Shown here piece by piece: positions 117 to 58,621 of a stretch of 64,000 nt of DNA. Where the stretch lies: the NCBI GenBank assembly GCA_002269645.1, contig NIVC01001143.1, positions 124,001 to 188,000 on the forward strand, read 5' to 3'. Within the stretch, counting starts at the first letter, position 1. Each line of letters begins with the position of its first letter. Made by a program: the position numbers and the translations under genes. Source of the stretch: Macrostomum lignano (taxonomy: Eukaryota). The notes under the pieces were generated by a model, which saw nothing but the letters and a program-made list of their open reading frames with translations, had not been told where the DNA came from and searched no databases.

Positions 117-530
117 ATGTCCGACTGGCTCACACCTGGGGCAGCGGGCGGCTCAGCCAGCAGCCCACTACTGCCCACCACCTTCGGAGTTGGCGGTGTC
201 AGCAGCGGCCTCGGCGCGGGCGTCGTCGACCACTTTGACATTCTCGACAGCGCCGGTGGCAGCGGCGGTGTCATTGGAGACGGCTGCCTCCTGATGGATG
301 ACGTCGGCCTCGGCGACGAGCCCGAAGTCCTCGGGTTGGAGGCGGCCGCTCTGCCAGCCGTGGAGGCCTCGGAGAACCAGTGCCTGCTGAGCGAGGAGTT
401 GTACAGACTGTCCAGAGTGCGCCGCGTCTGGAAGAAGGAGAGCCTGGAGCTCTGGGCGCTGAAGGATGACGCCGGCTACGTGCTGGAGAGCCGAGGCGGC
501 GTCTTCAGTCAGCAGTTTCAGCGAGCTCAG
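117..530 (+). CDS. Gene A exon 1 (Gly/Ser-rich N-terminus, first half of PH-like domain)
   Basis: MSDWLTPG...EELYRLSRVRRVWKKESLELW resembles PH beta1-beta2; donor CAG|GTGCGC at 531. Could be an internal exon if the gene starts left of the window. Confidence 0.7.
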
Positions 531-3500
531 GTGCGCTCGGTTAGTCTATTATTAACTGGGGCAGCTTAGTTGGTTTGTCGCAGGGTGGCTGTTGGGTTCC
601 GTCATAAATTTATGCGAAAGTTGAGTTGAAAGCAGTTCTGCACATCTTGCTGACCCCTGAGCACGCACAGCGGCCAGGCGTTACCGGTATATTACAAAAA
701 CAAGGGCCAGAGGAGGCGTTGACCCTCATCAGTATGAATCGTATGACTGTTCGGGAGCCCCAGATTAATGTGACCGCTCTCGGAATCGAACCCAGGCAAC
801 CCAGAGCGAGAGAGTCGGGCATGTCACGAGCTACCGCTCCACTGCTCAGCCCCTCTTGACAGGTGGTGCACAGGAGTTTTAAATCTCAGGCCCTGTCTGT
901 AACTCAACCAGGTGCGCTCTTGGACGGAGCTGACTGGCGGCGGCGGTGACGGACGCAGCTCCAACTCGAAGCGCCCCGTTGGCCGCCTGAAGGACCGGCT
1001 GGTGTTCGCCATCCGCTTTATCGCCGACTCGGAGTGCAGCGGCGCCGAGTCGCAACAGCCGGGGGTCGTCGGCGGCGGCGGTGCCAAGTGGCAGCGATTC
1101 CGCGCGGTCTCTGTGCACCAGATGTACCGCTGGATGCTGGTGCTCAGACGCCTGTTTGACGACCCGACCTGCCCCGAGCCGCGGCCCGGCCTCGACTTTG
1201 TCTCCCATGGCAACGAGGTTTGCTCTTACACTGCTGTTCAGCAGATTCATTCCCGATTTGGCTTGCCCGCTCAATGCCCGCCGACTCGAACTGGGAATTT
1301 CTTTTTTGCTTGCCTTCACCTGCTGATAGTCCCCTTGGTTTGAATTGACCCGAAGCTTGTGATTCCCTTAGTTTGAATTCAGCCGAAGCTTGTAATTCCC
1401 TTAGTTTTAATTCAGCCGAAGCTTGTAATTCCCTTAGTTTTAATTCAGCCGAAGCTTGTAATTCCCTTAGTTTTAATTCAGCCGAAGCTTGTAATTCCCT
1501 TATTTTTAATTCAGCCAAAGCTTGTAATTCCCTTAGTTTTAATTCAGCCGAAGCTTGTAATTCCCTTAGTTTTAACTCAGCCGAAGCTTGTAATTCCCTT
1601 AGTTTTAACTCAGCCGAAGCTTGTAACTCCCTTAGTTTTAACTCAGCCGAAGCTTGTAACTCCCTTAGTTTTAATTCAGCCGAAGCTTGTAATTCCCTTA
1701 TTTTTAATTCAGCCAAAGCTTGTAATTCCCTTAGTTTTAATTCAGCCGAAGCTTGTAATTCCCTTAGTTTTAACTCAGCCGAAGCTTGTAATTCCCTTAG
1801 TTTTAACTCAGCCGAAGCTTGTAATTCCCTTAGTTTTAACTCAGCCGAAGCTTGTAATTCCCCAAGTTTTAAAGGTGTTAATTCACCAGAGGCTTGTAAT
1901 ACCCTTGATTAATTTTACTCAACTCTGGTAATTCCCTTAGTTTAAATTCAGTCTCTGGTGGCTCACTTCAATCAAACAGTTTCAGTAAATTTCTTCTTGT
2001 CCAAAGCTTCTGCTGTTCTCTCTCTGGTGCACCAGGCCGCACACTTCTGTTGCCTTTGGCTCGCTTCCAGCGGGGCTCGGCCGGAGCCTCCCTGCCTGCC
2101 AACCTGCCTCAAGTGCTGCTAGACGGGGGCGTCCTTCACGGGGGTCACCGGTGGGGGGGCATGTTTTCCCTGTCTGTCCGAAACGCCGACCCCTCGCCCC
2201 ATCGTCTTAAGCGATTCGCCAACGCCCCGCTGCGCCGCCCACTTTCCAACAAAAATTTATAGTTCGCTTATTCGCGAGCCGCCGGCTTGGCTAATTAAAA
2301 AATCTGCTGTTGCGGACTGCCGGCGGAGGCGCTGCTGGCCGGCGCGGGCCGGTCGTAAACAAACACCGGCCGCTCCGCTGGTGGCGATCCGCTCTGCCGC
2401 CGTGTCCGGGTGACCCCTCGAGCGACACTTTGTTAGCGGCGGGGGGGGGGGTCCGGGGCTGCCCGGGCCCGCCGGAATTTCTGTGGCTCTTCAATGCGCC
2501 CTGCTCTCTTCTGCCTGACTCCCGGGCAGGAAGGCAGGCGATTCCTCAATAGCCTGCCTGCTGCACATATCGGGCCGGGGTCGGATTCCCATACCGGCCC
2601 TTCTTCCCGCTTTTATTCAAGTGGCTTTTCAGGTGGCTTCGCGTTGGTAGAAAGACTGACTACTCCCTGCTCGTCTCGGGACGGTTTGATCGGCACTTGG
2701 GGATTTTTTTAGATATGGCCGCTTCCTCAATGCGGGGAATTCGCCTCTCCGCCCTTCCTGAGGGATATTTTGGGAGTGGCCGCTTCCTCAATGCGGGGAA
2801 TTCGCCTCTCCGCCCTTCATGAGGGATATTTTGGGAGTGGCCGCTTCCTCAATGCGGGGAATTCGCCTCTCCGCCCTTCATGAGGGATATTTTGGGAGTG
2901 GCCGCTTCCTCAATGCGGGGAATTCGCCTCTCCGCCCTTCATGAGGGATATTATCTAGCATGGGAGTGGCCGCTTCCTCAATGCGGGGAATTCGCCTCTC
3001 CGCCCTTCCTGAGGGATATTATCTAGCATGGGAGTGGCCGCTTCCTCAATTGGAAAACTCTTGTCTCCACCCTGAGGGGGATATTTTGGGAGTGGCCGCT
3101 TCTCCATTGGAATAATTCCACTGTCACCTGTTTAAACCGCAAAATGACATTTGCATCGCGAACGCCCGCGGCAGGAGTTCCAGGGCCGCTGGGACAAGTG
3201 CCACCCCAGCATGCTGGACGCCCAGCTGTCTCACGAGGCGCACAGCAGCGAGTCCCGCGGCTCCGACACTGGCCGGCCGAGTTCCCGCTATCAACCTACC
3301 GGCCAGAGCCAGCAGCCGCCAAGCTATGAGTCCATCATGACTCAGATGAAGTCCTGCCAGGTGCCCGCTGTGGTGAGTGCTCGAAAGGGCGCTGGGCTGA
3401 TAATTGAATGATGAGCACTTGGGGGATGGACTGAGCACCTGAAGGGGATGAGGCTTAGTCTGAGCACCTGAAGGGGATGAGGCTTAGTCTGAGCACCTGA

Positions 3501-6500
3501 AGGGGATGAGGCTTAGTCTGAGCACCTGGAGGTGATGAGGCTCAGTCTGAGCACCTGGAGGTGATGAGGCTCAGTCTGAGCACCTGGAGGTGATGAGGCT
3601 CAGTCTGAGCACCTGGAGGTGATGAGGCTCAGTCTGAGCACCTGGAGGTGATGAGGCTCAGTCTGAGCACCTGGAGGTGATGAGGCTCAATCTGAGCACC
3701 TGGAGGTGATGAGGCTCTGTCTGAGCACCTGACTAATTATGCCTTGTCGCCGCCCCACCCGGCCGGCAGTTCCGCCAGCAGGATCACACGCCGCCACCCC
3801 TGCTGGCTGCCGGAGACGGCGCCTCGCAGAGCCGAAGGCGCCGCCGCCAGGAGGATGACACGTTCTTGCCGCCGCACGGGCCGCCGGTCCGCTGGCCGCT
3901 GAACCTTGGCGAGGGCGAGGAATTCGGCCTGCCTGAGCACGTGCAGCACCTGTGGGACTTCAACCTGGACCGGGCGGTGTTCGTGGACCACGCCAACAAG
4001 GCCGTGTTTTACGAGGACCCCCGCGGTGCCGACCGGGCCACCGCCAACGACCAGCTGCAGCAGCCGTGCCAGCAGCCCACCAAGTACGTCATCTACCGCG
4101 AGCCGGAGGGCCGGCAGAGCTCCACGGCCGACATTCTGCTGTCCCCGGAGAATCTCAGCGTGCTGGAGGCCGAGAAAATGGCTGAGGCCGCTCGCTCTAA
4201 GGTGAGGCTTTGGGGAGGCCTCCCACTGGTTTTCAGCCGCTACCTACCCTTTCATCCTAAGGGGGTTGTAGCCTAGTATTGTAATGCCCTTGAGAGCCAA
4301 GGCACAGTGAAGTGTAGCTCGTACCTACTAAATACTTAAGGATAAACAAAGTTGGGGCCGCTGTACACTCCTGTGTGGCTGCTCAGGGGAGTCAGCGGAA
4401 TGGGCAGTAACATGACTCTTGCCGGTTGTGAAAATTGCCTCTAATAAAAAATCAGTCCTTCAGGGGACTGTTAATACCCGCCCATCGCTGCAAATAGCAC
4501 TGAGGGCTCCATCTTCTCAAAGATCTGCCAGTCTTTCATAGCCTGCCTCTGCTCTTCTTTTCTCTTCGTTTTTAAGCACTTTTAGCAGAGATCCGCTGAA
4601 GAAGTCCGTTGCAGTGAGTGAGGATGATGGCGCTGCATTCACCGGCTTGCCAGATAAGCTCAGCTGCTGAGCAGCTGATAGAGGCAGAGAGAATGGGGAA
4701 ATGGAGTAAGCTGAGGCTAAAATAGCCGGACAGCAGCGAATCCCAGGGATAAAAGCAGCTTAGTTAAGGGAGGGCAGCCCTGAACTCGCGCTGCCGTGGG
4801 AAAAGCGCCGGGCTGCGATGCGGGCTTCGGCGCTGCCTGCCTGCCATGCGTGAAAGAGGCCGGGGGGGCGGTCCGGGCTGGGCAGATCTGTCCGCCCCGG
4901 CTTCCCGTGCCCCCCCCCCGCTGTCTCGCCAACTGGGTCGAATCTGGGGCGACTGCTGCTCAGAGTGAGTAGGGGAGGGGAGGGGGAGGGGGCGGATACA
5001 CGGGGACTGGCACAGTTGCCTGATACAGGCTCGCGCGTTCTTCATCTTGCTGCCCAAGCCGCCTCTCTCACTGCTCTGTTTTCAAGCTGTGATTCGTTGG
5101 GGAGGAAAATTTTAACTTTTTGTAAACCTGGATTTGGGTGAGCAGTGTCACTGAATTTGGGTGAGCAGTGTCACTGAATTTGGGTGAGCAGTGTCACTGA
5201 ATTTGGGTGAGCAGTGTCACTGAATTTGGGTGAGCAGTGTCACTGAATTTGGGTGAGCAGTGTCACTGAATTTGGGTGAGCAGTGTCACTGAATTCAGGT
5301 GAGCAGTGTCACTGAATTGGGTGAGCAGTGTCACTGAATTCAGGTGAGCAGTGTCACTGAATTTGGGTGAGCAGTGTCACTGAATTTGGGTGAGCAGTGT
5401 CACTGAATTGGGTGAACAGTGTCACTGAATTTGGGTGAGCAGTGTCACTGAATTTGGGTGAGCAGTGTCACTGAATTTGGGTGAGCAGTGTCACTGAATT
5501 TGGGTGAGCAGTGTCACTGAATTTGGGTGAGCAGTGTCACTGAATTTGGGTGAGCAGTGTCACTGAATTTGGGTGAGCAGTGTCACTGAATTTGGGTGAG
5601 CAGTGTCACTGAATTTGGGTGAGCAGTGTCACTGAATTTGGGTGAGCAGTGTCACTGAATTTGGGTGAGCAGTGTCACTGAATTTGGGTGAGCAGTGTCA
5701 CTGAATTTGGGTGAGCAGTGTCACTGAATTTGGGTGAGCAGTGTCACTGAATTTGGGTGAGCAGTGTTACTGAATTTGGGTGAGCAGTGTCACTGAATTT
5801 GGGTGAGCAGTGTCACTGAATTTGGGTGAGCAGTGTCACTGAATTTGGGTGAGCAGTGTCACTGAATTTGGGTGAGCAGTGTCACTGAATTTGGGTGAGC
5901 AGTGTCACTGAATTAGGGTGAGCAGTGCGCTGAATTTAGGTGAGCAGTGTCACTGAATTTAGGTGAGCAGTGTTACTGAATTTGGGTGAGCAGTGTCACT
6001 GAATTTGGGTGAGCAGTGTCACTGAATTTGGGTGAGCAGTGTCACTGAATTTGGGTGAGCAGTGTCACTGAATTTGGGTGAGCAGTGTCACTGAATTTGG
6101 GTGAGCAGTGTCACTGAATTAGGGTGAGCAGTGCGCTGAATTTAGGTGAGCAGTGTCGTGAATTTGGGTGATTGTTGAGGGGTTTTTTGTACTTTTGAAA
6201 TCGGAGATTTTTTGCTGGCGCATCTCAATTCATGATGAAGCTGAACTCCGGGAATCTGCGATGCAGAGAGAGCAGAGGCTGATGCATTCATGGGAAAAGA
6301 GCAGGGGAATTTTTTTAAAGTATCCCATTTTAGACAGAAGCTCTTCTCGATGAAGCTTTGAATGTGATGGGGAGTCTGGGCCTTAGTTGTAGCGGCGCAG
6401 TGAGAGCCCAGCCTCGTTAACAAACAATGCCTCCCCGGTTGGAAGCGAGCCAAAAAAGTCAGCGAAATTCCGCGACTGCGGTCTGCCAGCCTGGCTTGGT

Positions 6501-8360
6501 CGGTGGCTATTTTTAGCAGCATTGTGCGGCCGCGCCTGCAGCCCTGCGTTCGCCTGCACTTTTGGACCGGGGCAGGGCTGGGGATCAGACCACTGCCAGG
6601 CTGCGCTGTCCCTAATCCGCTTCCTGGATTGCGCCAGGGGGAGAAGGCATAATCAGAGCAGTTTACCTGGGACATTAGCGGGATAAGACGGCTTAACTGG
6701 GAATTTTATTTTATTAATTCCCATGGGAACCTCTTGAGCTCTGGCACTTCAAGTTGCTTCATTTCCTGTGTCGGTTTTTCCCACCGTTGACCTCAGCTCA
6801 CCTCTGTCCGCTCCTCTGCGCGGCCGCATGTCCGATCTCTCTGTTTTACTCGTATCTCCTGTCCCAACCAAAGACCGTAGCTGAGACCGACCAAAAGACG
6901 GCTGTGTCCGACCAAAAGAACACTTAGCTGTCCGACCAAAACACCACTCAGCTGTGTCCGACCGAAAGACAGCCACTTAGCTGTGTCCGACCAAAAGACC
7001 ACCTAGCTGTGTCCGGCCAAAGACCACCTAGCTGTGTCCGACCAAAAGACCACCTAGCTGTGTCCGGCCAAAGACCACCTAGCTGTGTCCGACCAAAAGA
7101 CCACCACCTAGCTGTGTCCGGCCAAAAGACCACCTAGCTGTGTCTGGCCAAAAGACCACCTAGCTGTGTCTGGCCAAAAGACCACCTAGCTGTGTCCGAC
7201 CAAAAGACCACTTAGCTGTCCGACCAAAAGACTGCCACCTAGCTGTGTCCGACCGAAAGACCGCCACCTAGCTGTGTGAGACCAACAGTGGGAAAAGCTT
7301 TGAAAGCATCGCCACATACGAGTATTAAATCGATCATTTCCCCCTTTTTCAGCCCCAGCTCATTGTGATCTCATCGTGCGGCCTGAACGGAGTCGACGGG
7401 CTGAAGGGCGAAGACGGTCGGGACGGCCACCCGGGCGAGGAGGGTATGCCGGCCTGCATCGGTGAGCTGCGTGGGCGTCCCACGTTGCACTTTTTAGCAT
7501 TGCCTGTGTCCGCTTCAGAATCAATTTGTTTTTTGATGGCGAGACAGTCTATTGTTAAAAATAATGCTTTTAGAGACGCGGAGGCTGGAACAATCTCAGA
7601 CTAATCTGCTTCTGCTGGCCCTCGCGCTGGGACTAATTGCCTTTTTTCATTTTCGAGACAGATAAGCTCGCCGCTGAGTGTAGCCGAATGGCGCTGTAGA
7701 TTAATATTGGGGTTTGGAATCGGTTGGGAAGTGCGGGGCCAGGTGGGGATCACCGGGGGGGGGAGTTAGGAGAGTTCGTAGAACCGCAGCAGCTCAGCCT
7801 GATGGACTCTCAGAGGTCTCGAGCAGGCTGGGGGGGCGCCTGAATAAAAATAATATACTTCTGCCACTCTGGGAGGCCCCGCTGCTCCGCTTCCCATGGG
7901 AATTGCGCCAGAGGAAGGAAGGGCCGAGAGAGGCAGGCAGCGGCCGGGAGGCCACTTGGCCCGGGCGTTTAACCGGCCCCGGTTCTCGGCGGCCTCGCCC
8001 TCCCCCACCCCCTGCTCCCGCCGGCCGGCTACTTTGTACTTTTGCAGAGAGAGGGGGGCAGTTTCGAGTCTTTTGCTGCCTCCCCCCAGTGTTTCTCTCT
8101 GCGCTGCTCACCCCGCGGCCATTGATTGTGCGAAACACTGGAAGGGAGGGCTTCATCTCCCAGCTTCCCTGGCATTGCTCACATTGGATTATCAGCACTG
8201 AGCACAAATTTGCCACCGCATCCCCACCAGCTCACGCCTTCCGCCCGCCACTCAGCCCAACTGCCCGGGCCGCATCTGGCCCAGCCCCAGACTCCACCGC
8301 AGAGCTTCATCCTTCATCTATATCCCCGCAATGCTGCCCAGCTAAAATAGGCAGGCAGGA

Positions 8361-8451
<91 letters not shown>

Positions 8452-23400: not shown

Positions 23401-26400
23401 TGTTGGGATTGAGGATGTGGTGTCTGCACCTGTGTCTACAGGTGTTAGGATTAACGAAATGATGTCTGCATCCCTATTACAGTTAAAGAGATCGTAAAGG
23501 AGGTTAAAAAGGTCAGAATGTCCTTCAGGTTATAAATAAATCATAATTCTGAGCATTGGATATTCCCACTCGCGTCAATTACATCCTCACAGCACGGCAA
23601 GCTAGTTGAGTACTGCTCCAACACGGTGCGCGTGGCGCCCTACTTTGTGGTCCGCGACCCGCCCGGCGACGCGCTGTTCGTCACGGGCCGCGGCACCACC
23701 CGCAGCAGCTTCCTGCAGTGGCAGTGCCTGCTGGAGACCCTCCACCTGGACGTGGACTTCTGGGACACGGAGCGCTACGAAGGCTTCAGCTTCTTCCGCG
23801 ACACCGGCCTGCGTCACGAGGTGACCTGGGTTGACCGCTACGGGGACCGCCTGCTCATTGTGCCAGACTACCGGCCCGAGCTGGTCTGCGGCCTCGACCT
23901 CGCCCGCCACTTCACCCTGGCCGCCAGGCTGGGTGACTCCGCCGCGCTGCTCATCGCCGGTGACCGCGCGCCGCTCGCCCGCCTGGTGGCTTCGCTGGCC
24001 GCCGAGCCCGCCAAGCCGCGGCTGGCCTACGGCTGCTCCGGCCGGCTGCTGCATCCCCTCAGCTGCGTCGGCGCCGACCGCGAGGAGGCCGTCAGAGAGA
24101 AGCGAATCCGCCGAATCCTCCGCGACCTCAACGCCGATTCGGCCGCCTCTGCCGCCGCCACCTCCGCCGCCGCTGTCCTCTACCGCCGGCAAGACGTTGA
24201 GATTCGCCGCGTCGGCTGCTGCCGCTGGAGCTACGGCGAGGCCGAATTCCGGCGCCTCGGCCTGCCGAGGACAGCCCGCCTCGCCTTTCTGGAGTTGCCG
24301 GACGGCGAGCCGCTCGAGTGCTGCCCGGCCGCCGCCTCCGTACCGATTGCCTCGCCGTGGGCGCAGGTGAGGCCGATGGGTCGATGACTTCGAAATAGCG
24401 CTTCTATAGAATCAGGCAATTCTGAAACCCATTGGAACAATCTGTGTCCTTGAGCAGGATACTCAACTCTGCATTGCTTCAGTTCACCCAGCTGTAAAAT
24501 GGGTGCCAGCATTAGCTGGGGTAATTGAGAGTGTGGTGACCTCCCAGTCCATGGACTGAACAGACTGAACAGCAATAGCTGCGGCTGAGCTGTCGGTTGC
24601 AGGTCTGGCCCGATTGGGGCAGGTGTAATCAATTATTATTATTACAAATCTAGACTTTTAAATATTGCAACCACCGATCTGTAAGACCAGACTCCTACCT
24701 GGGGAAAACTGGCTGCAGTGGACACGGACCGGCTCACGGAACGCCCTCTCCCCCCCCCCAGCTGTACCTGATCTGCCTGTCCCTGCTGCCCAGCTGCTCC
24801 CGGCGGAAGCTCTACAACCTCAAGCCGCTCAGGCCGCCTTCGACTGTTTCCGCGGCGGCAGACAACGAAGATGACGACGGCGGAGTTCTGTTTGCGCTGC
24901 CGTGGGGCGACACGCTGGAGCTGCCGCTGCTGGCCGCCATGTCGGTGCAGGCCTACCTCAGCGATGAGATCAGCGACTCCATGCGGGTTCGTCCGACTGC
25001 TGCTTTGCTGTGCCCGTGCACCTGTGCGTGTCTGCTGTGCCTGTCTGTGTGGATCCGCGTGTCTGCTGTGCCTGTTTGTGTGGATCCGTGTGTCTGCTGT
25101 GCCTGTTTGTGTGGATCTGTGTGTCTGCTGTGCCTGTCTGTGTGGATCCGTGTGTCTGCTGTGCCTGTCTGTGTGGATCCGTGTGTCTGCTGTGCCTGTC
25201 TGTGTGGATCTGTGTGTCTGCTGTGCCTGTCTGTGTGGATCCGTGTGTCTGCTGTGCCTGTCTGTGTGGATCCGTGTGTCTGCTGTGCCTGTTTGTGTGG
25301 ATCCGCGTGTCTGCTGTGCCTGTTTGTGTGGATCCGTGTGTCTGCTGTGCCTGTCTGTGTGGATCCGTGTGTCTGCTGTGCCTGTCTGTGTGGATCCGTG
25401 TGTCTGCTGTGCCTGTCTGTGTGGATCCGTGTGTCTGCTGTGCCTGTTTGTGTGGATCCGTGTGTCTGCTGTGCCTGTCTGTGTGGATCCGTGTGTCTGC
25501 TGTGCCTGTTTGTGTGGATCCGTGTGTCTGCTGTGCCTGTCTGTGTGGATCCGTGTGTCTGCTGTGCCTGTCTGTGTGGATCCGTGTGTCTGCTGTGCCT
25601 GTCTGTGTGGATCCGTGTGTCTGCTGTGCCTGTTTGTGTGGATCCGTGTGTCTGCTGTGCCTGTCTGTGTGGATCCGTGTGTCTGCTGTGCCTGTCTGTG
25701 TGGATCCGTGTGTCTGCTGTGCCTGTCTGTGTGGATCCGTGTGTCTGCTGTGCCTGTTTGTGTGGATCCGTGTGTCTGCTGTGCCTGTCTGTGTGGATCC
25801 GTGTGTCTGCTGTGCCTGTCTGTGTGGATCCGTGTGTCTGCTGTGCCTGTCTGTGTGGATCCGTGTGTCTGCTGTGCCTGTTTGTGTGGATCCGTGTGTC
25901 TGCTGTGCCTGTCTGTGTGGATCCGTGTGTCTGCTGTGCCTGTCTGTGTGGATCCGTGTGTCTGCTGTGCCTGTCTGTGTGGATCCGTGTGTCTGCTGTG
26001 CCTGTTTGTGTGGATCCGTGTGTCTGCTGTGCCTGTCTGTGTGGATCCGTGTGTCTGCTGTGCCTGTCTGTGTGGATCCGTGTGTCTGCTGTGCCTGTCT
26101 GTGTGGATCTGTGTGTCTGCTGTGCCTGTTTGTGTGGATCCGTGTGTCTGCTGTGCCTGTCTGTGTGGATCCGTGTGTCTGCTGTGCCTGTTTGTGTGGA
26201 TCCGTGTGTCTGCTGTGCCTGTCTGTGTGGATCCGTGTGTCTGCTGTGCCTGTCTGTGTGGATCCGTGTGTCTGCTGTGCCTGTCTGTGTGGATCTGTGT
26301 GTCTGCTGTGCCTGTTTGTGTGGATCCGTGTGTCTGCTGTGCCTGTCTGTGTGGATCTGTGTGTCTGCTGTGCCTGTCTGTGTGGATCCGTGTGTCTGCT

Positions 26401-29049
26401 GTGCCTGTTTGTGTGGATCCGTGTGTCTGCTGTGCCTGTCTGTGTGGATCCGTGTGTCTGCTGTGCCTGTCTGTGTGGATCTGTGTGTCTGGTGTGCGAG
26501 TGTCTGGCTAACTGTGTTTCGCACTCGTTTGTCGAGTGTGTCAGTCTCCCTGTGTCAATATTTCTTCAATCTCTTGTCCTTCCTTTTTTCTGTTGCTTAT
26601 TCGCGCCCAACCAAGGTCGGGTAAAATATTCCTCTTCAAAATCTTTTTGAAATCATACAAGGTAAATATAGTTCCAAGGTGTGTACTTTTAGGCATCGAA
26701 ATTCAAGTGCAAGACTCCGTCACGCCCGCTGTTCCCTTCAATCTGACGCCACCTCCCCAATTCAAAAATTTCCCGTGTTTTGCAAGCGAAAGCAAATGAC
26801 ATCTGCTGCAGCAGTTCGGCTGCCCCAGTCTACCCAAAGATAACTTTTAGCTGACGAGTCATTTGACAACTTGAATGCAGCTATAGTTACTCCCGCCGTT
26901 TACTCCAATAGAAATTAACTGCTACCTTTAGGAAGCGCCCTGACCTGGCTTCTGAGGGTTCATCAACTGCCCCGCCGCGCCTGTGAATCAGCGACCCGTC
27001 ATTCACGCCCTGGCGGGCCCATATTTGGGATGGCCTTCCCTCTGTCTCCCTTGCTGCTGCACGCGGCGATGATGCAGCCTTATAAACACATTGATATTAC
27101 TTGTAGGTGGGCTGGGTAAAGAGGGGATTCGAGGCCCAAATCATGTGGAATACTTGATAGCGGGCCAGCAGCCCCAGCAGCTCCACTGGTCCAATTTGTT
27201 ACACTGGAATCGGCCGCTGCAATCTGCCCAGATTGTAATCTGGTCGGTTCGCTGCGCTTCCAGTGTCCGATAGCGCACGCGGCACGCTTGCTAAGCAGGA
27301 GGCTTTGATAGTGATAGCTGGAAATGCCACCGCCGCTGCCTCCCTTGCTGACCGGCTGCGGCCTGTGCAGTTAATGCCCGGGATTGTAATGCGTTGTCAA
27401 GAGCCTTGAAGGGGAGAGTTCGGCCGCCACCCTCCCAGATTCCCATCTCTCTGTTAGCTACAGCCGCAGCCGCAATGCCGCACCGTCCCCGCCGCCCAAC
27501 CCAGGACTGCCCGAAGCTGAAGTCGCTGAGCTCCGACGTGGCGGCCAACGCTGCCAGCTACAGCCGCAGCCAGCCGGTGTCTCAGCGGGTCATTTTTTAC
27601 CTGCGCGACTACCGCAGGCAGGCGATGCGCTTCGCCCCCAAACCGCTGCGGCCGGCGATCCAGCAGGCGGTGGCCGAGGCGCTGCTGGCCATGAAGAAGG
27701 AGCTGGTGAGCGCCGGACACTTGCGAAGGAGTTCTTTAACCCTTAATGAATCGCCCTCCAGGCACCCTTAATGAATCGCCCTCCAGGCACCCTTAATGAA
27801 TCGCCCTCCAGGCACCCTTAATGAATCACCCTCCAGGCACCCTTAATGAATCGCCCTCCAGGCACCCTTAATGAATCGCCCTCCAGGCAACCTCAATGAA
27901 TCGCCCTCCAGGCACCCTTAATGAATCGCCCTCCAGGCACCCTTAATGAATCGCCCTCCAGGCACCCTTAATGAATCGCCCTCCAGGCACCCTCAATGAA
28001 TCGCCCTCCAGGCACCCTTAATGAATCGCCCTCCAGGCACCCTCAATGAATCGCCCTCCAGGCAGCCTTCATGAATCGCCCTCCAGGGACCCTTAATGAA
28101 TCGCCCTCCAGGCACCCTTAATGAATCACCCTCCAGGCACCCTCAATGAATCTCCCTCCAGGCACCCTTAATGAATCGCCCTCCAGGCACCCTCAATGAA
28201 TCGCCCTCCAGGCACCCTTAATGAATCGCCCTCCAGGCACCCTTAATGAATCGCCCTCCAGGCACCCTTAATGAATCGCCCTCCAGGCACCCTTAATGAA
28301 TCGCCCTCCAGGCAACCTTAATGAATCGCCCTCCAGGCACCCTCAATGAATCGCCCTCCAGGCACCCTTAATGAATCGTCCTCCAGGCACCCTCAATGAA
28401 TCGCCCTCCAGGCAGCCTTCATGAATCACCCTCCAGGCACCCTCAATGAATCTCCCTCCAGGCACCCTTAATGAATCGCCCTCCAGGCACCCTCAATGAA
28501 TCTCCCTCCAGGCACCCTTAATGAATCGCCCTCCAGGCACCCTTAATGAATCGCCCTCCAGGCAACCTTAATGAATCGCCCTCCAGGCACCCTCAATGAA
28601 TCGCCCTCCAGGCAACCTTAATGAATCGCCCTCCAGGCAGCCTTCATGAATCGCCCTCCAGGCACCCTTAATGAATCGCCCTCCAGGCACCCTTAATGAA
28701 TCGCCCTCCAGGCACCCTTAATAAATCGCCCTCCAGGCAACCTTCATGAATCGCCCTCCAGGCACCCTTAACGAATCGCCCTCCAGACAGCCGTGCTCGA
28801 ACCGCCTGCCCATCGCTCACCCACCCTCGTCAGGGCAGTCGCGAGTTCCGCCGCCGCAGCCGCCGCAGCCGGCAGGAGCTGGTCTCTCCGGCCGCGCTTC
28901 ACTTCGCAGACTTGCTGGACTCCAGCGGCGTAGCCCGTCCAGCCCGGCCGCAGCCGGACAGCGACCTGGCCAAACTTAGCGACCTGTTGGACGAGCCGGA
29001 CTACCAGCTGCTGGACCTGATGGCGCACCTGGCCAGCCAGCCCTTTTGA
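117..29049 (+). CDS. Gene A (14-exon model, ~1473 aa): PH-like + degenerate WW + Gly-rich (PGRS/collagen-like) + DUF7932-like large protein
   Basis: Exons 117-530, 912-1217, 3175-3372, 3770-4201, 7353-7443, 9180-9532, 19186-19830, 20715-20858, 22056-22160, 22734-23051, 23593-24366, 24762-24986, 27505-27705, 28834-29049. All introns are GT-AG and phase-compatible; the total is 4422 nt, ending in TGA. Start codon and acceptors of exons 8, 9 and 13 have in-frame alternatives. Confidence 0.75.
773..858 (-). mobile_element. tRNA-derived SINE-like head inside intron 1 of gene A
   Basis: Minus strand has a Pol III B box GGTTCGATTCC (plus 782-792) about 30 nt downstream of an A-box-like TAGCTCGTGAC; no complete cloverleaf, so not called a tRNA gene. 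Confidence 0.45.
912..1217 (+). CDS. Gene A exon 2 (second half of PH-like domain)
   Basis: ccag|GTG acceptor; VFAIRF...WQRFRAVSVHQMYRWMLVLRRL matches the PH C-terminal strand and helix with its conserved Trp; donor GAG|GTTTGC. Confidence 0.75.
1348..1870. repeat. 33-bp minisatellite (TTCAGCCGAAGCTTGTAATTCCCTTAGTTTTAA), ~15 copies
   Basis: Direct tandem periodicity; intron 2 of gene A. Confidence 0.95.
2715..3110. repeat. 61-72-bp minisatellite (GAGTGGCCGCTTCCTCAATGCGGGGAATTCG...), ~6 copies
   Basis: Tandem copies with period 61, some carrying an 11-bp insertion; intron 2 of gene A. Confidence 0.9.
3175..3372 (+). CDS. Gene A exon 3 (linker)
   Basis: gcag|GAG; EFQGRWDKCHPSML...QVPAV; donor GTG|GTGAGT; phase 0/0. 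Confidence 0.7.
3431..3732. repeat. 29-bp minisatellite (CTGAGCACCTGGAGGTGATGAGGCTCAGT), ~10 copies
   Basis: Fills most of intron 3 of gene A. Confidence 0.95.
3770..4201 (+). CDS. Gene A exon 4 (degenerate WW domain)
   Basis: LPEHVQHLWDFNLDRAVFVDHANKAVFYEDPR aligns to the WW consensus LPxGW...xYFVDHxxKTTxWEDPR; donor AAG|GTGAGG. Confidence 0.75.
5132..6170. repeat. 23-bp minisatellite (GTGAGCAGTGTCACTGAATTTGG), ~44 copies
   Basis: Highly homogeneous tandem array in intron 4 of gene A. Confidence 0.97.
6776..7296. mobile_element. Putative MITE-like element with 20-bp imperfect TIRs and an internal ~26-bp tandem repeat
   Basis: Left TTTTCCCACCGTTGACCTCA (6776-6795) vs reverse complement of right end TTTTCCCACTGTTGGTCTCA (7277-7296), 17/20 identical; internal repeat AGCTGTGTCCGACCAAAAGACCACCT at ~6880-7280. 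No clear TSD. Confidence 0.5.
7353..7443 (+). CDS. Gene A exon 5 (start of Gly-X-Y/Gly-rich region)
   Basis: tttttcag|CCC; PQLIVISSCGLNGVDGLKGEDGRDGHPGEE; donor G|GTATGC (phase 1). Confidence 0.75.
8365..8448. repeat. (GA)n microsatellite, ~42 units
   Basis: Pure GA run in intron 5 of gene A. Confidence 0.98.
9180..9532 (+). CDS. Gene A exon 6 (GGxGG repeats interrupted by hydrophobic strands)
   Basis: tgcag|CC (phase 1, matches exon 5); GGRGEDGGRGGDGG...FHLLLSG...IIFADLHGGRGG; donor ACG|GTGAGT. Confidence 0.8.
11088..12740 (+). CDS. Gene B: intronless 550-aa Gln/His/Ser-rich low-complexity protein nested in intron 6 of gene A
   Basis: 1653-bp ORF with strong GC3 codon bias like the other genes here; in-frame TAA two codons upstream of ATG; AATAAA at 12962 and 13058; short GYF-like motif LYYLDSASRLHGPM. 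Confidence 0.7.
   Translation: MTTKLQHHLVHPHHQHDKTDSNIASFGGTVTTTLSAAEGSGLRSVEKNAVLTEQLGGNQQHLLLHSVGSDAASGTSTGGTGDSGSVDDDALSAASGVSSGVSTDSAEMLERRLLLQRQQLLLQQQQQLQQQLQQQHQHQQQSERFASLLTVERGPATWTSHAQVTFRYRSDRLYYLDSASRLHGPMDQREQCQVASVRRYVSRSSSSQPPVATRSHHRTMHTVQTAAAGPPASGAAAATSSGFVSSATGGLDDGILLLERRLTSQSQHQHQHHQLPYSRVQVNRYDDWNSGPAPMPRSYSQQLDYGAGFRRQRSHRDQPVHQQHHSYHRQHQQFRGRQHSNPGFDARLEHLERSLNDAMESIRRQTSVQQQQQTRQSHHHQHHQHHGGRPQNQQHLYIASEHQDSAELNRRFSSEPPFEFRYSQRTMTHEPPQVTEEVETTTLQPIGRGIHDLGSGSRVIATQVQQQQQQYSLTEQRGTVGRVSRLAVRPPEAGARSLSANRNATLRASTPVSPKPLTVGGSGGGGGGGFSRGRHLSANTQQQREFTQVY
13595..14149. repeat. 40/44-bp minisatellite (TTCATTCTTGAGACACCTGTAGGCATCGAGTATGTGGAGC), left arm
   Basis: Tandem array interrupted by the LTR element at ACACC. 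Confidence 0.95.
14150..14274 (-). repeat. 3' LTR (125 bp)
   Basis: TG...CA termini with 6-bp inverted ends; adjacent polypurine tract AAGGTGGAGGGA on the minus strand (14275-14286). Confidence 0.97.
14295..17387 (-). CDS. pol: Retrotransposon Pol (aspartic protease, reverse transcriptase, RNase H, integrase)
   Basis: LIDSGSS protease; RT ...LNIQDDIIVYG; RNase H VDASPVGLGAIL / YSQIEREALAI; integrase HEGH...CKKC, DFKGP, SDNG, GEVERFN. Open over 1030 codons; in frame with gag. Confidence 0.95.
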   Translation of the reverse strand: MEINGIESTVLIDSGSSASLISMKSWESVKSKDTVLNRSEKPRLYAYMSKKALEVLGTTTLVVMAGDSVKRIKFIVTCGINAETILGCQDSIDLNLLQITINQIEKKNEEIERILKDHQEVFQGVGRLTTQPAVTIALKEGSTPISQSITRVAAHLREALLQELEEQENSGIIEKVDGPSAWLSRLVVVPKGKTGKVRLTVDLRNLNEATEKLQFPIPSLDDQLTNMGEASCFSYIDGKKMFHQIELDSESRHLTTFSTGIPGQPLYRYKRLPMGWVNSSFYLQAYMTKVLAGLQGLLNIQDDIIVYGKDVKEHNNRLKQVLARLVENGMTVGKEKCKFGMSKATFMGFILTEKGITIHEKKTEAIQMFKPPCNPSEVKSFLGLAQFVARFVPNLATLSKPLNDLTKKGKTWEWGPEQENSFNSIKAAISSTETLAYFGTGRETQLRVDASPVGLGAILVQRQKDGNLQPVCYASITLTDVETRYSQIEREALAIKWGCEKFSHFLKGAAEFTVITDHKPLLGCFASNSKPPPRIERWAMRLQPFNFKIKYEPGDTNEADILSRQPVKTPNDTLCNRRDIAFINSKLENAVSTALSLEQIRKDSAIDDEIVEALESIVSGETWKKHNKLFAERNKLSEQNGILLYEDRIVLPKSMRQKALLIAHEGHQRISKAKERLRSTVFWPGISKDVEIFCKKCNVCIHTTKKGSRIPIVPTEIPDKPWDKVAMDFKGPLPNGSNLLVFIDYHSRFPLVFIMKRTEASDVVRILKKVISLFGPMKELVSDNGTNFCSKVVDEYLNSQGVIHSRIIPRHPAANGEVERFNETLNKVIRRSRILNGSSFEEELQIFLHAYRTTPMRATGVAPANLFFRWSARTKLPQMNDETIDPLIKQKDKDADYKRKMSNYANRNARDCDIKTGDTVVIEREARNKYDSFFGTEQYYVRKRVGGLLILENKSGTIKKRHVNKARKIFPDSESDEALVTFSGGGGMSDSQREKRDASEIPQCDPRTMRRSGLRPQTVLRRPVRFPTMN
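17409..18341 (-). CDS. gag: Retrotransposon Gag with two CCHC zinc knuckles
   Basis: CYRCNRTGHRPWDC and CKFCHKKGHIKQAC (CX2CX4HX4C); capsid-like ETFDSFYSRLKSAAKYC...LLRDLIV. Confidence 0.93.
   Translation of the reverse strand: MASAQFYSIGHFDPDEDPLNNADKWNEYVQEVELFMEVQGIADEKKQATFLLLAGPKIRKLLQTVSYEQGYEATKEALSSLFQGATNSVHETYKLLSVSQIEGETFDSFYSRLKSAAKYCNLHVEYKPGGNESTVKLSFEDRLLRDLIVLKSTSKPLRTLLLKEGSDLTLKKAVEISKNFEATKTQAKDIEKPTNEARNTVSKIDNRPTNKLQFKQTDKRTSTPNTNKCDRVCYRCNRTGHRPWDCFARNMECKFCHKKGHIKQACRLCLKTGSRIKTRNIQISEQPEEQNGNDESNGEEINTVAMTESK
18388..18401 (-). promoter_or_regulatory. Primer-binding site complementary to the tRNA-Leu 3' end
   Basis: Minus strand TGGTGGCAGCGGTG, 1 nt inside the 5' LTR; complementary to ...CACCGCTGCCA-CCA of eukaryotic tRNA-Leu(AAG/TAG). 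Confidence 0.8.
18403..18527 (-). repeat. 5' LTR (125 bp)
   Basis: 124/125 identical to 14150-14274. Confidence 0.97.
18528..18930. repeat. 44-bp minisatellite, right arm of the array split by the LTR element
   Basis: Same unit as 13595-14149, with TAAGC/CATGT variants. Confidence 0.95.
19186..19830 (+). CDS. Gene A exon 7 (Gly-rich end, start of DUF7932-like region)
   Basis: tacag|GGC continues the Gly repeat of exon 6 in phase 0; GGNGGRLLITADNPCLLMLVEADLRGG...YDVVVEQYEV...VVVTNVRLRNRGGMALP; donor AAG|GTGAGC. Confidence 0.8.
20481..20657. repeat. 31-bp minisatellite (CACCCAGCCTGGCCTGACCTAAACCTTCTGA), ~6 copies
   Basis: Tandem copies just upstream of the exon 8 acceptor. Confidence 0.9.
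20715..20858 (+). CDS. Gene A exon 8
   Basis: gcag|CTG; LEPNEQYTVTALFHGRL...LVGRQFTG; donor GGG|GTGAGT. Alternative in-frame acceptor at 20690. Confidence 0.7.
20883..21822. repeat. 21/22-bp pyrimidine-rich minisatellite (CATTCCCTACACCTCTCCCCTG), ~43 copies
   Basis: Starts about 25 bp after the exon 8 donor. Confidence 0.97.
22056..22160 (+). CDS. Gene A exon 9
   Basis: ctcag|GTC; VGCTRKVRIRHPVVLSAVNLPPQMGRGEQYCVNIE; donor GAG|GTGAGC. Alternative in-frame acceptor at 22013. Confidence 0.65.
22186..22627. repeat. 21-bp minisatellite (GTGAGCTCATTCTACCCGTGT), ~20 copies
   Basis: Fills most of intron 9 of gene A. Confidence 0.97.
22734..23051 (+). CDS. Gene A exon 10 (beta-sandwich-like)
   Basis: aacag|GTG; VTNQSAFNF...CQVELYM; donor ATG|GTGAGT. 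Confidence 0.75.
23077..23447. repeat. 42-bp minisatellite (GAGGATGTGGTGTCTGCACCTGTGTCTACAGGTGTTGGGATT), ~9 copies
   Basis: Intron 10 of gene A. Confidence 0.95.
23593..24366 (+). CDS. Gene A exon 11 (alpha/beta region)
   Basis: cacag|CAC; HGKLVEYCSNTVRVAPYF...DALFVTG...QWQCLLETLHLDVDFWDTERY; donor CAG|GTGAGG. Confidence 0.8.
24762..24986 (+). CDS. Gene A exon 12
   Basis: Poly-C tract then ccag|CTG; LYLICLSLLP...SDEISDSMR; donor CGG|GTTCGT. Confidence 0.7.
25022..26490. repeat. 31-bp minisatellite (GTGTCTGCTGTGCCTGTCTGTGTGGATCCGT), ~47 copies
   Basis: Starts about 35 bp after the exon 12 donor; explains the four 500-aa Cys-rich ORFs. Confidence 0.97.
27505..27705 (+). CDS. Gene A exon 13 (helical)
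   Basis: ccag|GAC; DCPKLKSLSSDV...ALLAMKKEL; donor CTG|GTGAGC. Alternative in-frame acceptor at 27438. Confidence 0.65.
27741..28790. repeat. 25-bp minisatellite (CCTTAATGAATCGCCCTCCAGGCAC), ~41 copies
   Basis: Fills almost all of intron 13 of gene A. Confidence 0.97.
28834..29049 (+). CDS. Gene A exon 14 (terminal)
   Basis: tcag|GGC; GSREFRRRSRRS...LDLMAHLASQPF-TGA. Confidence 0.7.
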   Translation, partial: GSREFRRRSRRSRQELVSPAALHFADLLDSSGVARPARPQPDSDLAKLSDLLDEPDYQLLDLMAHLASQPF

Positions 29050-29112
29050 CCTGCTGGGCAGTCAAGCCAACCTGGCAGTCTAGCAGGCTGGATAGACTAA
29101 CGATCCGCTGAT

Positions 29113-51911: not shown

Positions 51912-58621
<6,710 letters not shown>

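What the first reader, a model, noticed from the sequence alone, without database searches (positions are those of the whole stretch)
117..29049. Large animal gene joining PH and degenerate WW modules to a PGRS/collagen-like, DUF7932-type body
Seen: a phase-consistent 14-exon frame with PH-like and WW-like motifs at the N-terminus, then GGxGGxGG repeats broken by hydrophobic strands (FHLLLSG, IIFADLHGG, LLITADNPCLLMLVEADLRGG), then YDVVVEQYEV...VTNVRLRNRGGMALP, RKVRIRHPVVL...GE...VTNQS and DALFVTG...QWQ..LE.L.LDVDFWD. From memory, these last motifs follow the order of an uncharacterised family known mainly from fungi and protists (DUF7932-type) that I do not recall carrying PH or WW domains. 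Inference: a membrane-recruited, proline-motif-binding version of a patchily distributed family, possibly acquired horizontally and then fused to animal signalling modules. This is the best candidate for an undescribed system in the window.
Basis: partly seen in the sequence, partly recalled or inferred. Interest (0 to 1): 0.72.

Follow-up and report, generated by a model that had tools for sequence, protein, structure and literature searches.

The report
Flatworm DUF7932-family gene, full length
This is a real 14-exon gene of the flatworm Macrostomum lignano encoding a 1487-residue member of a conserved but unstudied protein family (PH-like and WW-like modules, a glycine-rich block, Ig-like DUF7932 domains and an unknown tail); the same layout occurs in a sponge, a ribbon worm and many other eukaryotes, so it is not a flatworm novelty.

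Summary
A phase-consistent 14-exon GT-AG model (117-29049, + strand) encodes 1487 aa. Its junctions match two partial deposited Macrostomum lignano models, and a family profile built without any Macrostomum sequence recovers exons 4-12 in order.

The family call is right: Pfam DUF7932 scores 37 bits (cut-off 27) over its full length, but only after exons 7-9 are spliced. The WW-like module is supported by a family profile, whose PDB hits are almost all WW domains (best E 4.5e-6). In this protein the first signature Trp is kept and the second is Tyr. The PH-like module has only weak support.

PH-like, WW-like, Gly-rich, DUF7932 and tail occur together in at least 22 other clusters, including a sponge and a nemertean. 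The window protein groups with trematode homologues. So there is no recent transfer and no flatworm-specific fusion. Bacteria and amoebae carry the body without the N-terminal modules.

Function is unknown. My best guess is a cytosolic, membrane-recruited scaffold; other relatives carry FYVE or a canonical PH domain instead. Verdict: new member of a known, uncharacterised family; moderate-to-low interest.

The parts
117..530 (+). Exon 1 (aa 1-138): start codon, low-complexity leader, first half of the PH-like module (LLSEELYRLSRVRRVWKKESLELWAL...)
   Evidence: Open frame and donor CAG|gtgcgc. The paralogue P0005 begins MTDW... and runs through exons 1+2. No profile detected it.
912..1217 (+). 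Exon 2 (aa 139-240): second half of the PH-like module, including the C-terminal helix (KWQRFRAVSVHQMYRWMLVLRRL)
   Evidence: P0004 starts inside this exon. The N-terminal HMM built without Mlig hits 1089-1145 (rank 3 of 1770, E 0.38). It aligns with the family motif FRA..IVQ.R.FMA.LG.
3175..3372 (+). Exon 3 (aa 241-306): linker with the conserved GxWD motif and a PPxY-type motif (PPSY at 3316-3327)
   Evidence: Junctions identical to P0004. HMM without Mlig gives E 0.024, rank 2. A [PL]PxY motif is present in 14 of 18 family N-termini; in 10 of them it lies at this aligned linker position.
3770..4201 (+). Exon 4 (aa 307-450): invariant F.PP.GPP segment and the WW-like module (about 3851-4027; W368 kept, second Trp position is Y387, DPR kept), then a helical linker
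   Evidence: HMM without Mlig gives E 1.5e-25. PDB hits are WW domains. AF2 gives three to four short strands at pLDDT 53-63. The top Foldseek hits, though weak, are WW domains.
7353..7461 (+). Exon 5 (aa 451-486): start of the Gly-x-x region
   Evidence: Donor ATCG|gtgagc at 7461 reproduces P0004 (GEEGMPACIAGG). An alternative in-frame donor at 7443 would remove 6 aa. Family HMM hit.
9180..9532 (+). Exon 6 (aa 487-604): Gly-rich block 1-2 with hydrophobic strands (FHLLLSG, IIFADLHGG)
   Evidence: Family HMM E 3e-18. AF2 pLDDT 85-97.
19186..19830 (+). Exon 7 (aa 605-819): Gly-rich blocks 2-3 with LLITADNPCLLMLVEADLRGG (to about 19563), then the first half of DUF7932 (from about 19642)
   Evidence: Family HMM E 1.1e-44. 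Pfam hits. P0001 starts at this exon.
20691..20858 (+). Exon 8 (aa 820-875): middle of DUF7932
   Evidence: Only the acceptor at 20691 keeps the frame. Family HMM E 8.6e-14. It completes the Pfam match.
22056..22160 (+). Exon 9 (aa 876-910): end of DUF7932 (to about 22085) and start of the second Ig-like domain
   Evidence: E 3e-4.
22734..23051 (+). Exon 10 (aa 911-1016): second Ig-like beta-sandwich
   Evidence: Family HMM E 7.5e-13. AF2 strands at pLDDT 70-89. Foldseek matches tandem beta-sandwich proteins.
23593..24366 (+). Exon 11 (aa 1017-1274): conserved C-terminal region 1 (KLxEY...DxLFVT...VDFWD...RH...), predicted to open with an alpha/beta element
   Evidence: The acceptor is confirmed by P0001 (HGKLVEYCS). 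Family HMM E 6.6e-39. W and D of FWD are invariant or nearly so. No Pfam or PDB match.
24762..24986 (+). Exon 12 (aa 1275-1349): start of helical C-terminal region 2
   Evidence: P0001. Family HMM E 0.008. Top hit of the region-2 HMM built without Mlig.
27505..27705 (+). Exon 13 (aa 1350-1416): C-terminal region 2
   Evidence: P0001. Second-best hit of the region-2 HMM built without Mlig (E 0.5).
28834..29049 (+). Exon 14 (aa 1417-1487 plus TGA)
   Evidence: P0001 covers it up to ...DLAKLSD. The stop is at 29047-29049.

Best explanation
**What it is (shown; about 0.9).** This is one 14-exon gene of Macrostomum lignano. It encodes a 1487-aa member of a conserved, uncharacterised eukaryotic subfamily of DUF7932 proteins. 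From N to C the protein has:
- a divergent PH-like module
- a linker with a PPxY-type motif
- an invariant F.PP.GPP segment followed by a degenerate WW-like module
- about 280 residues with Gly at every third position, interrupted by conserved hydrophobic strands
- two Ig-like beta-sandwich domains, the first being DUF7932
- a conserved alpha/beta-plus-helical tail of about 470 residues with no known relatives

The whole architecture is inherited. It was not assembled in flatworms.

**How it most likely works (inferred; about 0.3).** It is probably a cytosolic protein that is brought to phosphoinositide-containing membranes by its N-terminal PH-like module. Other branches of the family have acquired FYVE fingers or a canonical PH domain instead. 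At the membrane, the rigid Gly-rich and Ig-like body would present the conserved C-terminal region as the working part, either as a binding or oligomerisation platform or as an unrecognised enzyme. The WW-like module probably packs against its own neighbouring proline segment, or serves as a latch with the PPxY motif, rather than acting as a free proline-motif reader. The PPxY-type motif could recruit NEDD4-type ligases.
For: **Identity**
- Gene model and junctions.
- Deposited partial models P0004, P0001 and P0005.
- Colinear recovery of exons by profiles built without Macrostomum.
- Pfam DUF7932 at 37.1 bits over its full length.
- 228 representative relatives, 38 of them at E<=1e-30.
- The same five-module order in at least 22 clusters.
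- Named orthologues in sponge and nemertean. The trematode homologues lack a detectable PH-like/WW-like region.
- The flatworm sequences group together in the tree.

**WW-like module**
-.

**PH-like module**
-.
- Classic beta1 pattern, read directly in the Lineus sequence (GYLWRKKRVFKKWQKIEFVL).

**Cytosolic and membrane-linked**
- No signal peptide or hydrophobic segment in the translated N-terminus.
- P0058 carries three FYVE fingers (E 3e-36).
- P0102 carries Pfam PH plus SPRY.

**Body**
- Gly lag-3 autocorrelation is 0.60.
- AF2 gives pLDDT 85-97 for the Gly-rich part with almost no helix or strand.
- The Ig-like tandem has pLDDT 60-89 and matches integrin leg, complement MG and transglutaminase barrel domains.
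- The C-terminal FWD, Y and H positions are nearly invariant.
Against: - No experiment or transcript was available.
- Pfam does not detect the PH-like or WW-like module in this protein itself. The PH-like region was modelled at pLDDT 30-53.
- The second, ligand-contacting Trp of the WW is Tyr here and is variable across the family. Canonical proline-motif binding is therefore doubtful.
- The tail was modelled poorly (pLDDT below 50 from residue 403 of the fragment), because only 9 sequences were allowed in the alignment. It has no Pfam or PDB relative.
- One bacterial homologue has a signal peptide (P0183). The body is therefore not intrinsically cytosolic.
- A paralogue gene model (P0007) joins a different, Q/H-rich 5' exon to the body. 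Isoforms without the PH-like and WW-like modules may exist.
Confidence: 0.6

Rival explanations
1. Two genes: exons 1-6 (PH-like, WW-like and the first Gly-rich part) and exons 7-14 (body and tail) are separate transcription units. Alternatively, the main transcript of the body starts at the Q/H-rich ORF inside intron 6.
For: - Deposited models are split exactly there: P0004 ends by reading into intron 6, and P0001 starts at exon 7.
- Intron 6 is 9.65 kb. It holds a 551-codon same-strand ORF (11088-12740) and a retroelement.
- The paralogue model P0007 joins a homologue of that ORF to the body exons.
Against: - Orthologues encode both halves in one uninterrupted ORF: P0180 (1306 aa), P0008, P0009 and others.
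- Exon 6 ends and exon 7 begins in phase 0 inside the same conserved Gly-rich block. Family profile positions 295-420 (exon 6) and 414-612 (exon 7) abut.
- I could not find a donor after the intron-6 ORF that fits the exon 7 acceptor in this copy (by reading the sequence).
Confidence: 0.12
2. Recent horizontal acquisition: the DUF7932 body entered the flatworm (or animal) lineage from a microbe and was then fused to pre-existing animal PH and WW exons.
For: - Bacterial homologues of the Gly-rich, DUF7932 and alpha/beta body lie on clearly bacterial contigs.
- Amoebozoan and heterolobosean homologues lack the N-terminal modules.
- The distribution is patchy, and no vertebrate, insect or nematode name appeared among the 30 clusters whose names were looked up.
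- Many relatives are intronless.
Against: - The fused architecture is shared with a sponge, a nemertean and more than 20 further clusters. Any fusion therefore predates flatworms by far.
- The window protein clusters with trematodes.
- The gene has 13 spliceosomal introns and host-like composition.
- The PH-like and WW-like modules are family-specific and divergent. They are not copies of ordinary animal PH or WW exons.
Confidence: 0.08
3. Secreted collagen-like or PGRS-like structural protein: the Gly-x-x region forms a collagen triple helix and the protein works outside the cell.
For: - Weak Pfam Collagen hits (17-20 bits).
- Strict Gly period of 3.
- PDB hits to collagen VI and to the C1q stalk at E 0.05-0.1.
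- One bacterial homologue has a signal peptide.
Against: - All collagen scores are below the 27.2-bit cut-off.
- Most triplets are GGx with few prolines, and they are broken by conserved hydrophobic strands.
- There is no signal peptide.
- PH-like, WW-like, FYVE and PH partners are cytosolic modules.
- AF2 models the region as a compact, confident monomeric unit.
Confidence: 0.05

Closest known systems
DUF7932-domain proteins of other animals: Oopsacas minuta KAI6661803.1 (1298 aa) and Lineus longissimus XP_064649595.1 (1243 aa); also trematode proteins of Calicophoron daubneyi and Opisthorchis viverrini
   Same: The module order is the same from the PH-like start to the helical tail. Identity is 26-28% over the body. 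The motifs F.PP.GPP, LWDP...FLDH...DPR, DP.LLMLVE.DC, KLIEY and VDFWD are shared.
   Different: - The window protein has a longer low-complexity leader and a 30-residue insert in the PH-like module.
- It is the most divergent of the full-length set.
- The trematode proteins have lost a detectable PH-like and WW-like region.
- None of these proteins has been studied. A full-text search for DUF7932 finds no paper.
WW domains of NEDD4-family ligases, KIBRA, YAP and MAGI (Pfam PF00397)
   Same: - The beta2-beta3 signature (aromatic-aromatic-x-[DN]-H ... DPR) is shared.
- The first Trp is kept.
- The family profile finds about 50 PDB WW domains.
- 5 of 18 relatives hit Pfam WW.
   Different: - It is below threshold in this protein.
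- The beta1-beta2 loop is shorter.
- The second (ligand) Trp is Tyr here and is variable in the family.
- It is always preceded by an invariant F.PP.GPP...GYG.EVGL extension that AF2 adds as a fourth strand.
Glycine-rich polyproline-II (polyglycine-II) helix bundle domains: snow-flea antifreeze protein, Obg N-domain, phage S16 gp38 tip, ALK/LTK glycine-rich domain (reviewed in bioRxiv 10.1101/2023.11.25.568672)
   Same: - Gly falls at every third residue over long runs, mostly as GGx triplets.
- The predicted structure is confident and lacks helices and sheets.
- It tolerates inserted loops and strands.
   Different: - There is no sequence or Foldseek match to any of these structures.
- I could not inspect the coordinates of the model, so the helix type is inferred.
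- The only structural neighbour is an uncharacterised phage protein in BFVD (E 9e-4, 213 columns, rmsd 3.3).
Pleckstrin-homology domains (Pfam PF00169), such as the Tiam PH-CC-Ex domain
   Same: - The beta1 pattern with basic residues and the C-terminal amphipathic helix with a conserved aromatic or Arg residue are shared.
- One relative hits Pfam PH (3.4e-4).
- The family profile hits Tiam2 (0.02).
- The weak Foldseek hits are PH-like FACT domains.
   Different: There is no significant match for the window protein itself, and the model has low confidence. Lipid binding is untested.

Membership tests
Pfam DUF7932 (PF25560) | Profile score at or above the curated gathering score (27 bits) over most of the 130-position model | tested here: met
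   37.1 bits, E 5e-9, profile positions 4-129 of 130, residues 751-879 of the first spliced model. Exon 7 alone gives 27.3 bits.
Pfam DUF7932 (PF25560) | Beta-sandwich (Ig-like) fold | tested here: met
   AF2 gives an all-beta structure at pLDDT 60-89. Foldseek gives E 1e-8 to 1e-6 against integrin leg, complement MG, transglutaminase barrel and bacterial adhesin domains.
PH-like/WW-like subfamily of DUF7932 proteins (defined here) | Colinear PH-like, WW-like, Gly-rich, double Ig-like, C-terminal region 1 and region 2 | tested here: met
   All five local HMMs hit the model in order, as they do in at least 22 relatives. HMMs built without the window protein still find exons 2-13.
WW domain (PF00397) | Pfam profile above threshold | tested here: not met
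   No hit at E<=10 for the whole protein or for the isolated segment. At family level, 5 of 18 relatives match (best E 1.6e-4), and the family profile finds PDB WW domains (best E 4.5e-6).
WW domain (PF00397) | Two signature tryptophans 20-22 residues apart and a C-terminal proline | tested here: not met
   W368 is kept and the second position is Y387. The spacing is 19, and DPR is kept (reading).
WW domain (PF00397) | Three-stranded antiparallel sheet | tested here: inconclusive
   AF2 predicts strands at VQHLWD, RAVFVD and AVFY, but at pLDDT 53-63. The best Foldseek hit is MAGI WW1 at E 0.7.
WW domain (PF00397) | Binds proline-rich ligands (PPxY and similar) | not testable with these tools
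   Needs a binding assay.
PH domain (PF00169) | Pfam profile above threshold | tested here: not met
   No hit for the window protein. 1 of 18 relatives matches at 3.4e-4, and PH_20 matches at 0.047.
PH domain (PF00169) | Seven-stranded beta-sandwich capped by a C-terminal helix | tested here: inconclusive
   AF2 gives three strands plus a terminal helix at pLDDT 30-53. There are weak Foldseek hits to PH-like Pob3/Spt16 domains (E 3-7) and a Tiam2 PH-CC-Ex profile hit at E 0.02.
PH domain (PF00169) | Phosphoinositide or membrane binding | not testable with these tools
   Needs a lipid-binding assay or a localisation experiment.
Collagen triple helix (PF01391) | Pfam profile above 27.2 bits; Gly-X-Y with frequent Pro; secretion | tested here: not met
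   17.4 bits. Gly periodicity is present, but the triplets are mostly GGx. There is no signal peptide.
Glycine-rich PPII/PGII helix bundle domains | Structural match to a solved bundle (sfAFP, Obg, gp38, ALK) | tested here: not met
   No PDB match at E<=10 covers the Gly-rich part.
Glycine-rich PPII/PGII helix bundle domains | Gly every third residue in runs that are ordered but neither helix nor strand | tested here: met
   Lag-3, lag-6 and lag-9 autocorrelations are 0.60, 0.53 and 0.45. pLDDT is 85-97 with DSSP '-' across the Gly runs. Backbone angles were not inspected.

The most novel reading that the evidence does not exclude
The family may be an undescribed cell-biological machine. In this reading it is a cytosolic scaffold whose ordered glycine-rich block is a new kind of polyglycine-II/beta hybrid fold. 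Interchangeable lipid-binding heads (PH-like, FYVE, PH) would target it to membranes. Its conserved tail, with invariant Trp-Asp, Tyr and His positions, would be a new enzyme or assembly domain. The body would be old enough to be shared with bacteria, kept in sponges, nemerteans and flatworms, and apparently lost from the standard model animals.
Probability: 0.2. Interest if true: 0.6.

Novelty: new member of a known kind. Interest (0 to 1): 0.35.

Why it matters
For this window the gain is mainly annotation. Two partial deposited Macrostomum models (exons 2-6 and 7-14) are one 1487-aa gene.

For the family, this work adds three points that Pfam does not record:
- A large subfamily carries conserved PH-like and WW-like modules in front of the glycine-rich block.
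- Other branches carry FYVE or PH domains, which points to membranes.
- Bacteria have the body alone.

The family is large, conserved from sponge to flatworm and entirely unstudied. Macrostomum lignano is a laboratory animal with RNAi and transgenesis, so a first functional test is feasible there. It would matter more if the glycine-rich block proves to be a new ordered fold, or if the tail proves to be an enzyme.

Tried and rejected
**Splice-site choices**
- Acceptor 20672 for exon 8 and acceptor 23606 for exon 11 break the frame. I replaced them with 20691 and 23593.
- Donor 7443 for exon 5 is in frame, but donor 7461 reproduces the deposited model.

**Searches that gave little or nothing**
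- Single-sequence word-indexed searches found only Macrostomum copies.
- The third word-indexed search, run with a full-length profile, was swamped by glycine-rich candidates and returned only 22 proteins. This also limited the alignments allowed for structure prediction to 9 sequences, so the PH-like part and the tail were modelled poorly.
- Sequence search of PDB with the core, the PH-like segment, the Gly-rich segment and a tail profile returned nothing useful.
- Pfam on tail fragments, NCBIfam and PADLOC on bacterial and eukaryotic relatives returned nothing.
- Literature search for DUF7932 returned no paper.

**Questions left open**
- I could not name the organism behind the intronless orthologues. 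The neighbouring gene is a POLQ orthologue, which I take as a sign of a eukaryote, but the cluster look-ups carried no names.
- I considered a TIR-like or receiver-like reading of the DxLFVT...VDFWD element, from its pattern alone. No profile supports it, so I do not claim it.
- My first reading, that both WW tryptophans are lost (from the HMMER alignment), was wrong. The family alignment and the model place W368 at the first Trp position.
Full report
**1. What is in the sequence**

The window has eukaryotic features: about 55% G+C, many minisatellites and a retroelement. Starting from stop-to-stop open stretches and GT/AG sites, I rebuilt a model on the + strand. It has 14 exons:
- 117-530
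- 912-1217
- 3175-3372
- 3770-4201
- 7353-7461
- 9180-9532
- 19186-19830
- 20691-20858
- 22056-22160
- 22734-23051
- 23593-24366
- 24762-24986
- 27505-27705
- 28834-29049

All introns are GT-AG, the phases agree and there is no internal stop. The product is 1487 aa.

**2. Is the model real?**

Four independent lines say yes.

(a) Pfam DUF7932 is borderline and half-length on exon 7 alone (27.3 bits, profile 4-67). After exons 7-8-9 are spliced it becomes full-length and clearly significant (37.1 bits, 4-129 of 130).

(b) Deposited Macrostomum lignano proteins reproduce the junctions.
- BOX15_Mlig010679g1 (P0004) equals exons 2-6 with 2 mismatches in 396 aa. This fixed the exon 5 donor at 7461.
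- P0001 equals exons 7-14.
- The paralogue fragment P0005 joins exons 1 and 2.

(c) A profile of 39 relatives, none from Macrostomum, was searched against all six-frame fragments of the window. It hits exons 4 to 12 in colinear order, with E-values from 1e-44 to 8e-3, and nothing else.

(d) An N-terminal profile built without the window protein ranks exons 4, 3 and 2 as the three best of 1770 fragments, again in order. A tail profile ranks exons 12 and 13 first and second.

Exon 1 and exon 14 have the least support. The organism is Macrostomum lignano, going by the names of the identical or near-identical proteins.

**3. What the protein is made of**

*DUF7932 and the second beta domain.* AlphaFold (9-sequence alignment) gives an all-beta tandem at pLDDT 60-89. 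Foldseek matches it to tandem beta-sandwich proteins: integrin alpha legs, complement MG domains, transglutaminase barrels and bacterial adhesins, at E 1e-8 to 1e-6. DUF7932 is therefore an Ig-like domain.

*WW-like module (exon 4).*
- Pfam does not see it in this protein.
- Its best PDB sequence hits are nevertheless WW domains.
- A profile of 18 family N-termini finds about 50 PDB WW domains and almost nothing else: WWP1 4.5e-6, Itch 6.6e-6, NEDD4L 1e-5, KIBRA 1.4e-5.
- Five of the 18 relatives hit Pfam WW.
- The family alignment and the model place W368 at the first signature Trp and Y387 at the second. DPR is kept.
- The module is always preceded by an invariant F.PP.GPP...GYG.EVGL segment, which the model adds as an extra strand.

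'Degenerate WW' is a fair description.

*PH-like module (exons 1-2).* Support is weak but consistent.
- One relative hits Pfam PH (3.4e-4) and one hits PH_20.
- The family profile hits the Tiam2 PH-CC-Ex domain (0.02).
- The Lineus orthologue has a textbook beta1 pattern.
- The low-confidence model has strands followed by a terminal helix.
- The weak Foldseek neighbours include PH-like FACT domains.

*Linker.* A [PL]PxY motif (PPSY here, 3316-3327) occurs in 14 of 18 family N-termini. In 10 of them it lies at this aligned linker position.

*Glycine-rich block (exons 5-7).*
- It is 38% Gly with a strict period of three (autocorrelation 0.60, 0.53 and 0.45 at lags 3, 6 and 9).
- Most triplets are GGx, broken by conserved hydrophobic strands such as DP.LLMLVE.DC.
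- AlphaFold models it with pLDDT 85-97, yet DSSP assigns almost no helix or strand.
- No PDB structure matches it. One uncharacterised phage protein in BFVD does (E 9e-4).
- Collagen profile scores stay below threshold.
- Ordered glycine-rich domains with this periodicity are known as polyproline-II/polyglycine-II helix bundles: snow-flea antifreeze, Obg, phage gp38 and ALK (bioRxiv 10.1101/2023.11.25.568672). I infer something of that kind, mixed with beta strands. I could not inspect coordinates, and the membership test by structure failed.

*Tail (exons 11-14).* It is conserved, with invariant or near-invariant FWD, Y and H positions. The model opens it with an alpha/beta element, followed by long helices, but at low confidence. 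No Pfam or PDB relative exists.

**4. Relatives and distribution**

An exhaustive HMMER search with the 757-aa core found 228 representative clusters (38 at E<=1e-30). Mapping five local profiles on the best 147 shows two layers.

*Inner layer.* These proteins are about 1200-1300 aa and carry the complete order: PH-like, WW-like, Gly-rich, double Ig-like, tail regions 1 and 2.
- At least 22 clusters have this order.
- Named members are Oopsacas minuta (sponge) and Lineus longissimus (nemertean).
- P0180 and P0181 also belong here.
- Many copies are single uninterrupted ORFs on contigs of up to 4.5 Mb, from unnamed eukaryotes. One lies next to a POLQ orthologue. Its apparent break is a one-base frameshift in an A-run.
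- Trematode homologues (Calicophoron, Opisthorchis) are longer and have lost a detectable N-terminal pair.

*Outer layer.* These proteins have the Gly-rich block, the Ig-like domains and tail region 1 only.
- It includes Willaertia (Heterolobosea) and Vannella (Amoebozoa).
- One protein has three FYVE fingers.
- One has a canonical PH plus a SPRY domain inserted in the tail.
- Three homologues lie on plainly bacterial contigs, one of them with a signal peptide.

In a quick neighbour-joining tree, the window protein groups with the two trematodes. The sponge and nemertean branch near the base of the inner layer. The tree has no bootstrap support, so I treat it only as an indication.

**5.

The observation and the family recall were right. 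The idea that this is an unusual, possibly horizontally acquired body newly fused to animal signalling modules is not supported.
- The fusion is a shared, old feature of a whole subfamily.
- The flatworm sequences behave as vertically inherited.
- The two N-terminal modules are family-specific divergent versions, not ordinary animal PH or WW exons.

What remains true is that the family is patchy and that its body is shared with bacteria. An ancient transfer in either direction is therefore open.

**6. Mechanism**

Nothing is known experimentally, and a full-text search for DUF7932 finds no paper.

My best-supported guess, at about 0.3, is a cytosolic peripheral-membrane scaffold.
- *Shown:* the translated N-terminus has no signal peptide or hydrophobic segment, and three different lipid-binding heads (PH-like, FYVE, PH) have been joined to the same body in different branches.
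- *Inferred:* membrane recruitment by the PH-like head, a rigid spacer made of the glycine-rich and Ig-like parts, and an effector role for the conserved tail.
- *Inferred:* the WW-like module probably serves a structural or latch role with its neighbouring proline segment or the PPxY motif, because the ligand-contacting Trp is not conserved.

The rivals are two transcription units, recent transfer and a secreted collagen-like protein. They are listed with their evidence in the Rival explanations section.

**7. Verdict**

This is a correct and careful observation of a real gene. It is a new, full-length member of a known but uncharacterised family, and its N-terminal modules were not previously annotated. 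It is not a new kind of system as far as the evidence goes. Interest is moderate to low. It would be higher if the glycine-rich block or the tail turns out to be structurally or enzymatically new.

Noticed in passing
window 11088-12740 (+), inside intron 6: A 551-codon ATG-to-stop ORF lies on the same strand as the host gene. It is rich in Gln and His and ends in a poly-Gly run. It has no Pfam hit. A paralogue gene model (P0007) joins a homologous stretch to the body exons 7-13. It may therefore be a nested gene or an alternative 5' exon. I found no donor in this copy that fits the exon 7 acceptor.
   Followed up: partly
window 14295-18341 (-), inside intron 6: An LTR-retrotransposon-type element lies here. 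It has an intact 1030-aa pol ORF with RT, RNase H, integrase zinc finger and integrase core domains. It also has a 310-aa gag-like ORF with two CCHC knuckles. Minisatellite arrays of a related 40-44-bp unit flank it on both sides (13594-14152 and 18528-18913).
   Followed up: partly
window introns: 1332-1872, 2716-3102, 3431-3731, 5128-6171, 6901-7285, 20887-21820, 22184-26497 (several arrays), 27739-28786; downstream 29108-31016: Almost every intron of the gene holds a long, well-kept minisatellite array (period 16-61 bp, up to 52 copies, 87-98% matches). These arrays create the long spurious repetitive ORFs seen.
   Followed up: partly
window 61439-62497 (-): An uninterrupted 352-aa ORF encodes a heterotrimeric G-protein beta subunit (Pfam WD40_Gbeta, E 8.7e-115).
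   Followed up: partly
window about 58298-58351 (+), within ORF 57803-58621: This is the C-terminal third of a homeodomain ([14 protein letters not shown]; Pfam Homeodomain positions 40-57, E 2.9e-6). It is presumably one exon of a homeobox gene whose other exons I did not locate.
   Followed up: no
window 49002-50672 (+): A 556-aa ORF contains an SPVPT repeat run. It has no Pfam match.
   Followed up: no
L001 12355-12370: The orthologue P0006 is split into two called genes by a single-base frameshift in an A-run (GAAAAAATTC). This is either an assembly error or a very recent pseudogene. The 76%-identical P0180 is intact.
   Followed up: yes
relatives P0058 and P0102: Distant family members carry other lipid-binding modules. 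P0058 has three FYVE fingers at its C-terminus. P0102 has a canonical PH domain and a SPRY domain inserted in the tail.
   Followed up: partly
L002 7278-9995, L003 5872-9351, L004 6001-9144: Bacterial homologues of the Gly-rich, DUF7932 and alpha/beta body lie among ordinary bacterial genes: FtsQ-type POTRA, MurB, a histidine kinase, peptidases, NUDIX, KsgA and CobW. No neighbour is shared between the three loci. P0183 has a signal peptide.
   Followed up: partly
window 7443 versus 7461: Exon 5 has two in-frame, same-phase donors 18 nt apart (AGG|gtatgc and TCG|gtgagc). The downstream one matches the deposited model. The upstream one would delete GMPACI, so alternative use is possible.
   Followed up: yes
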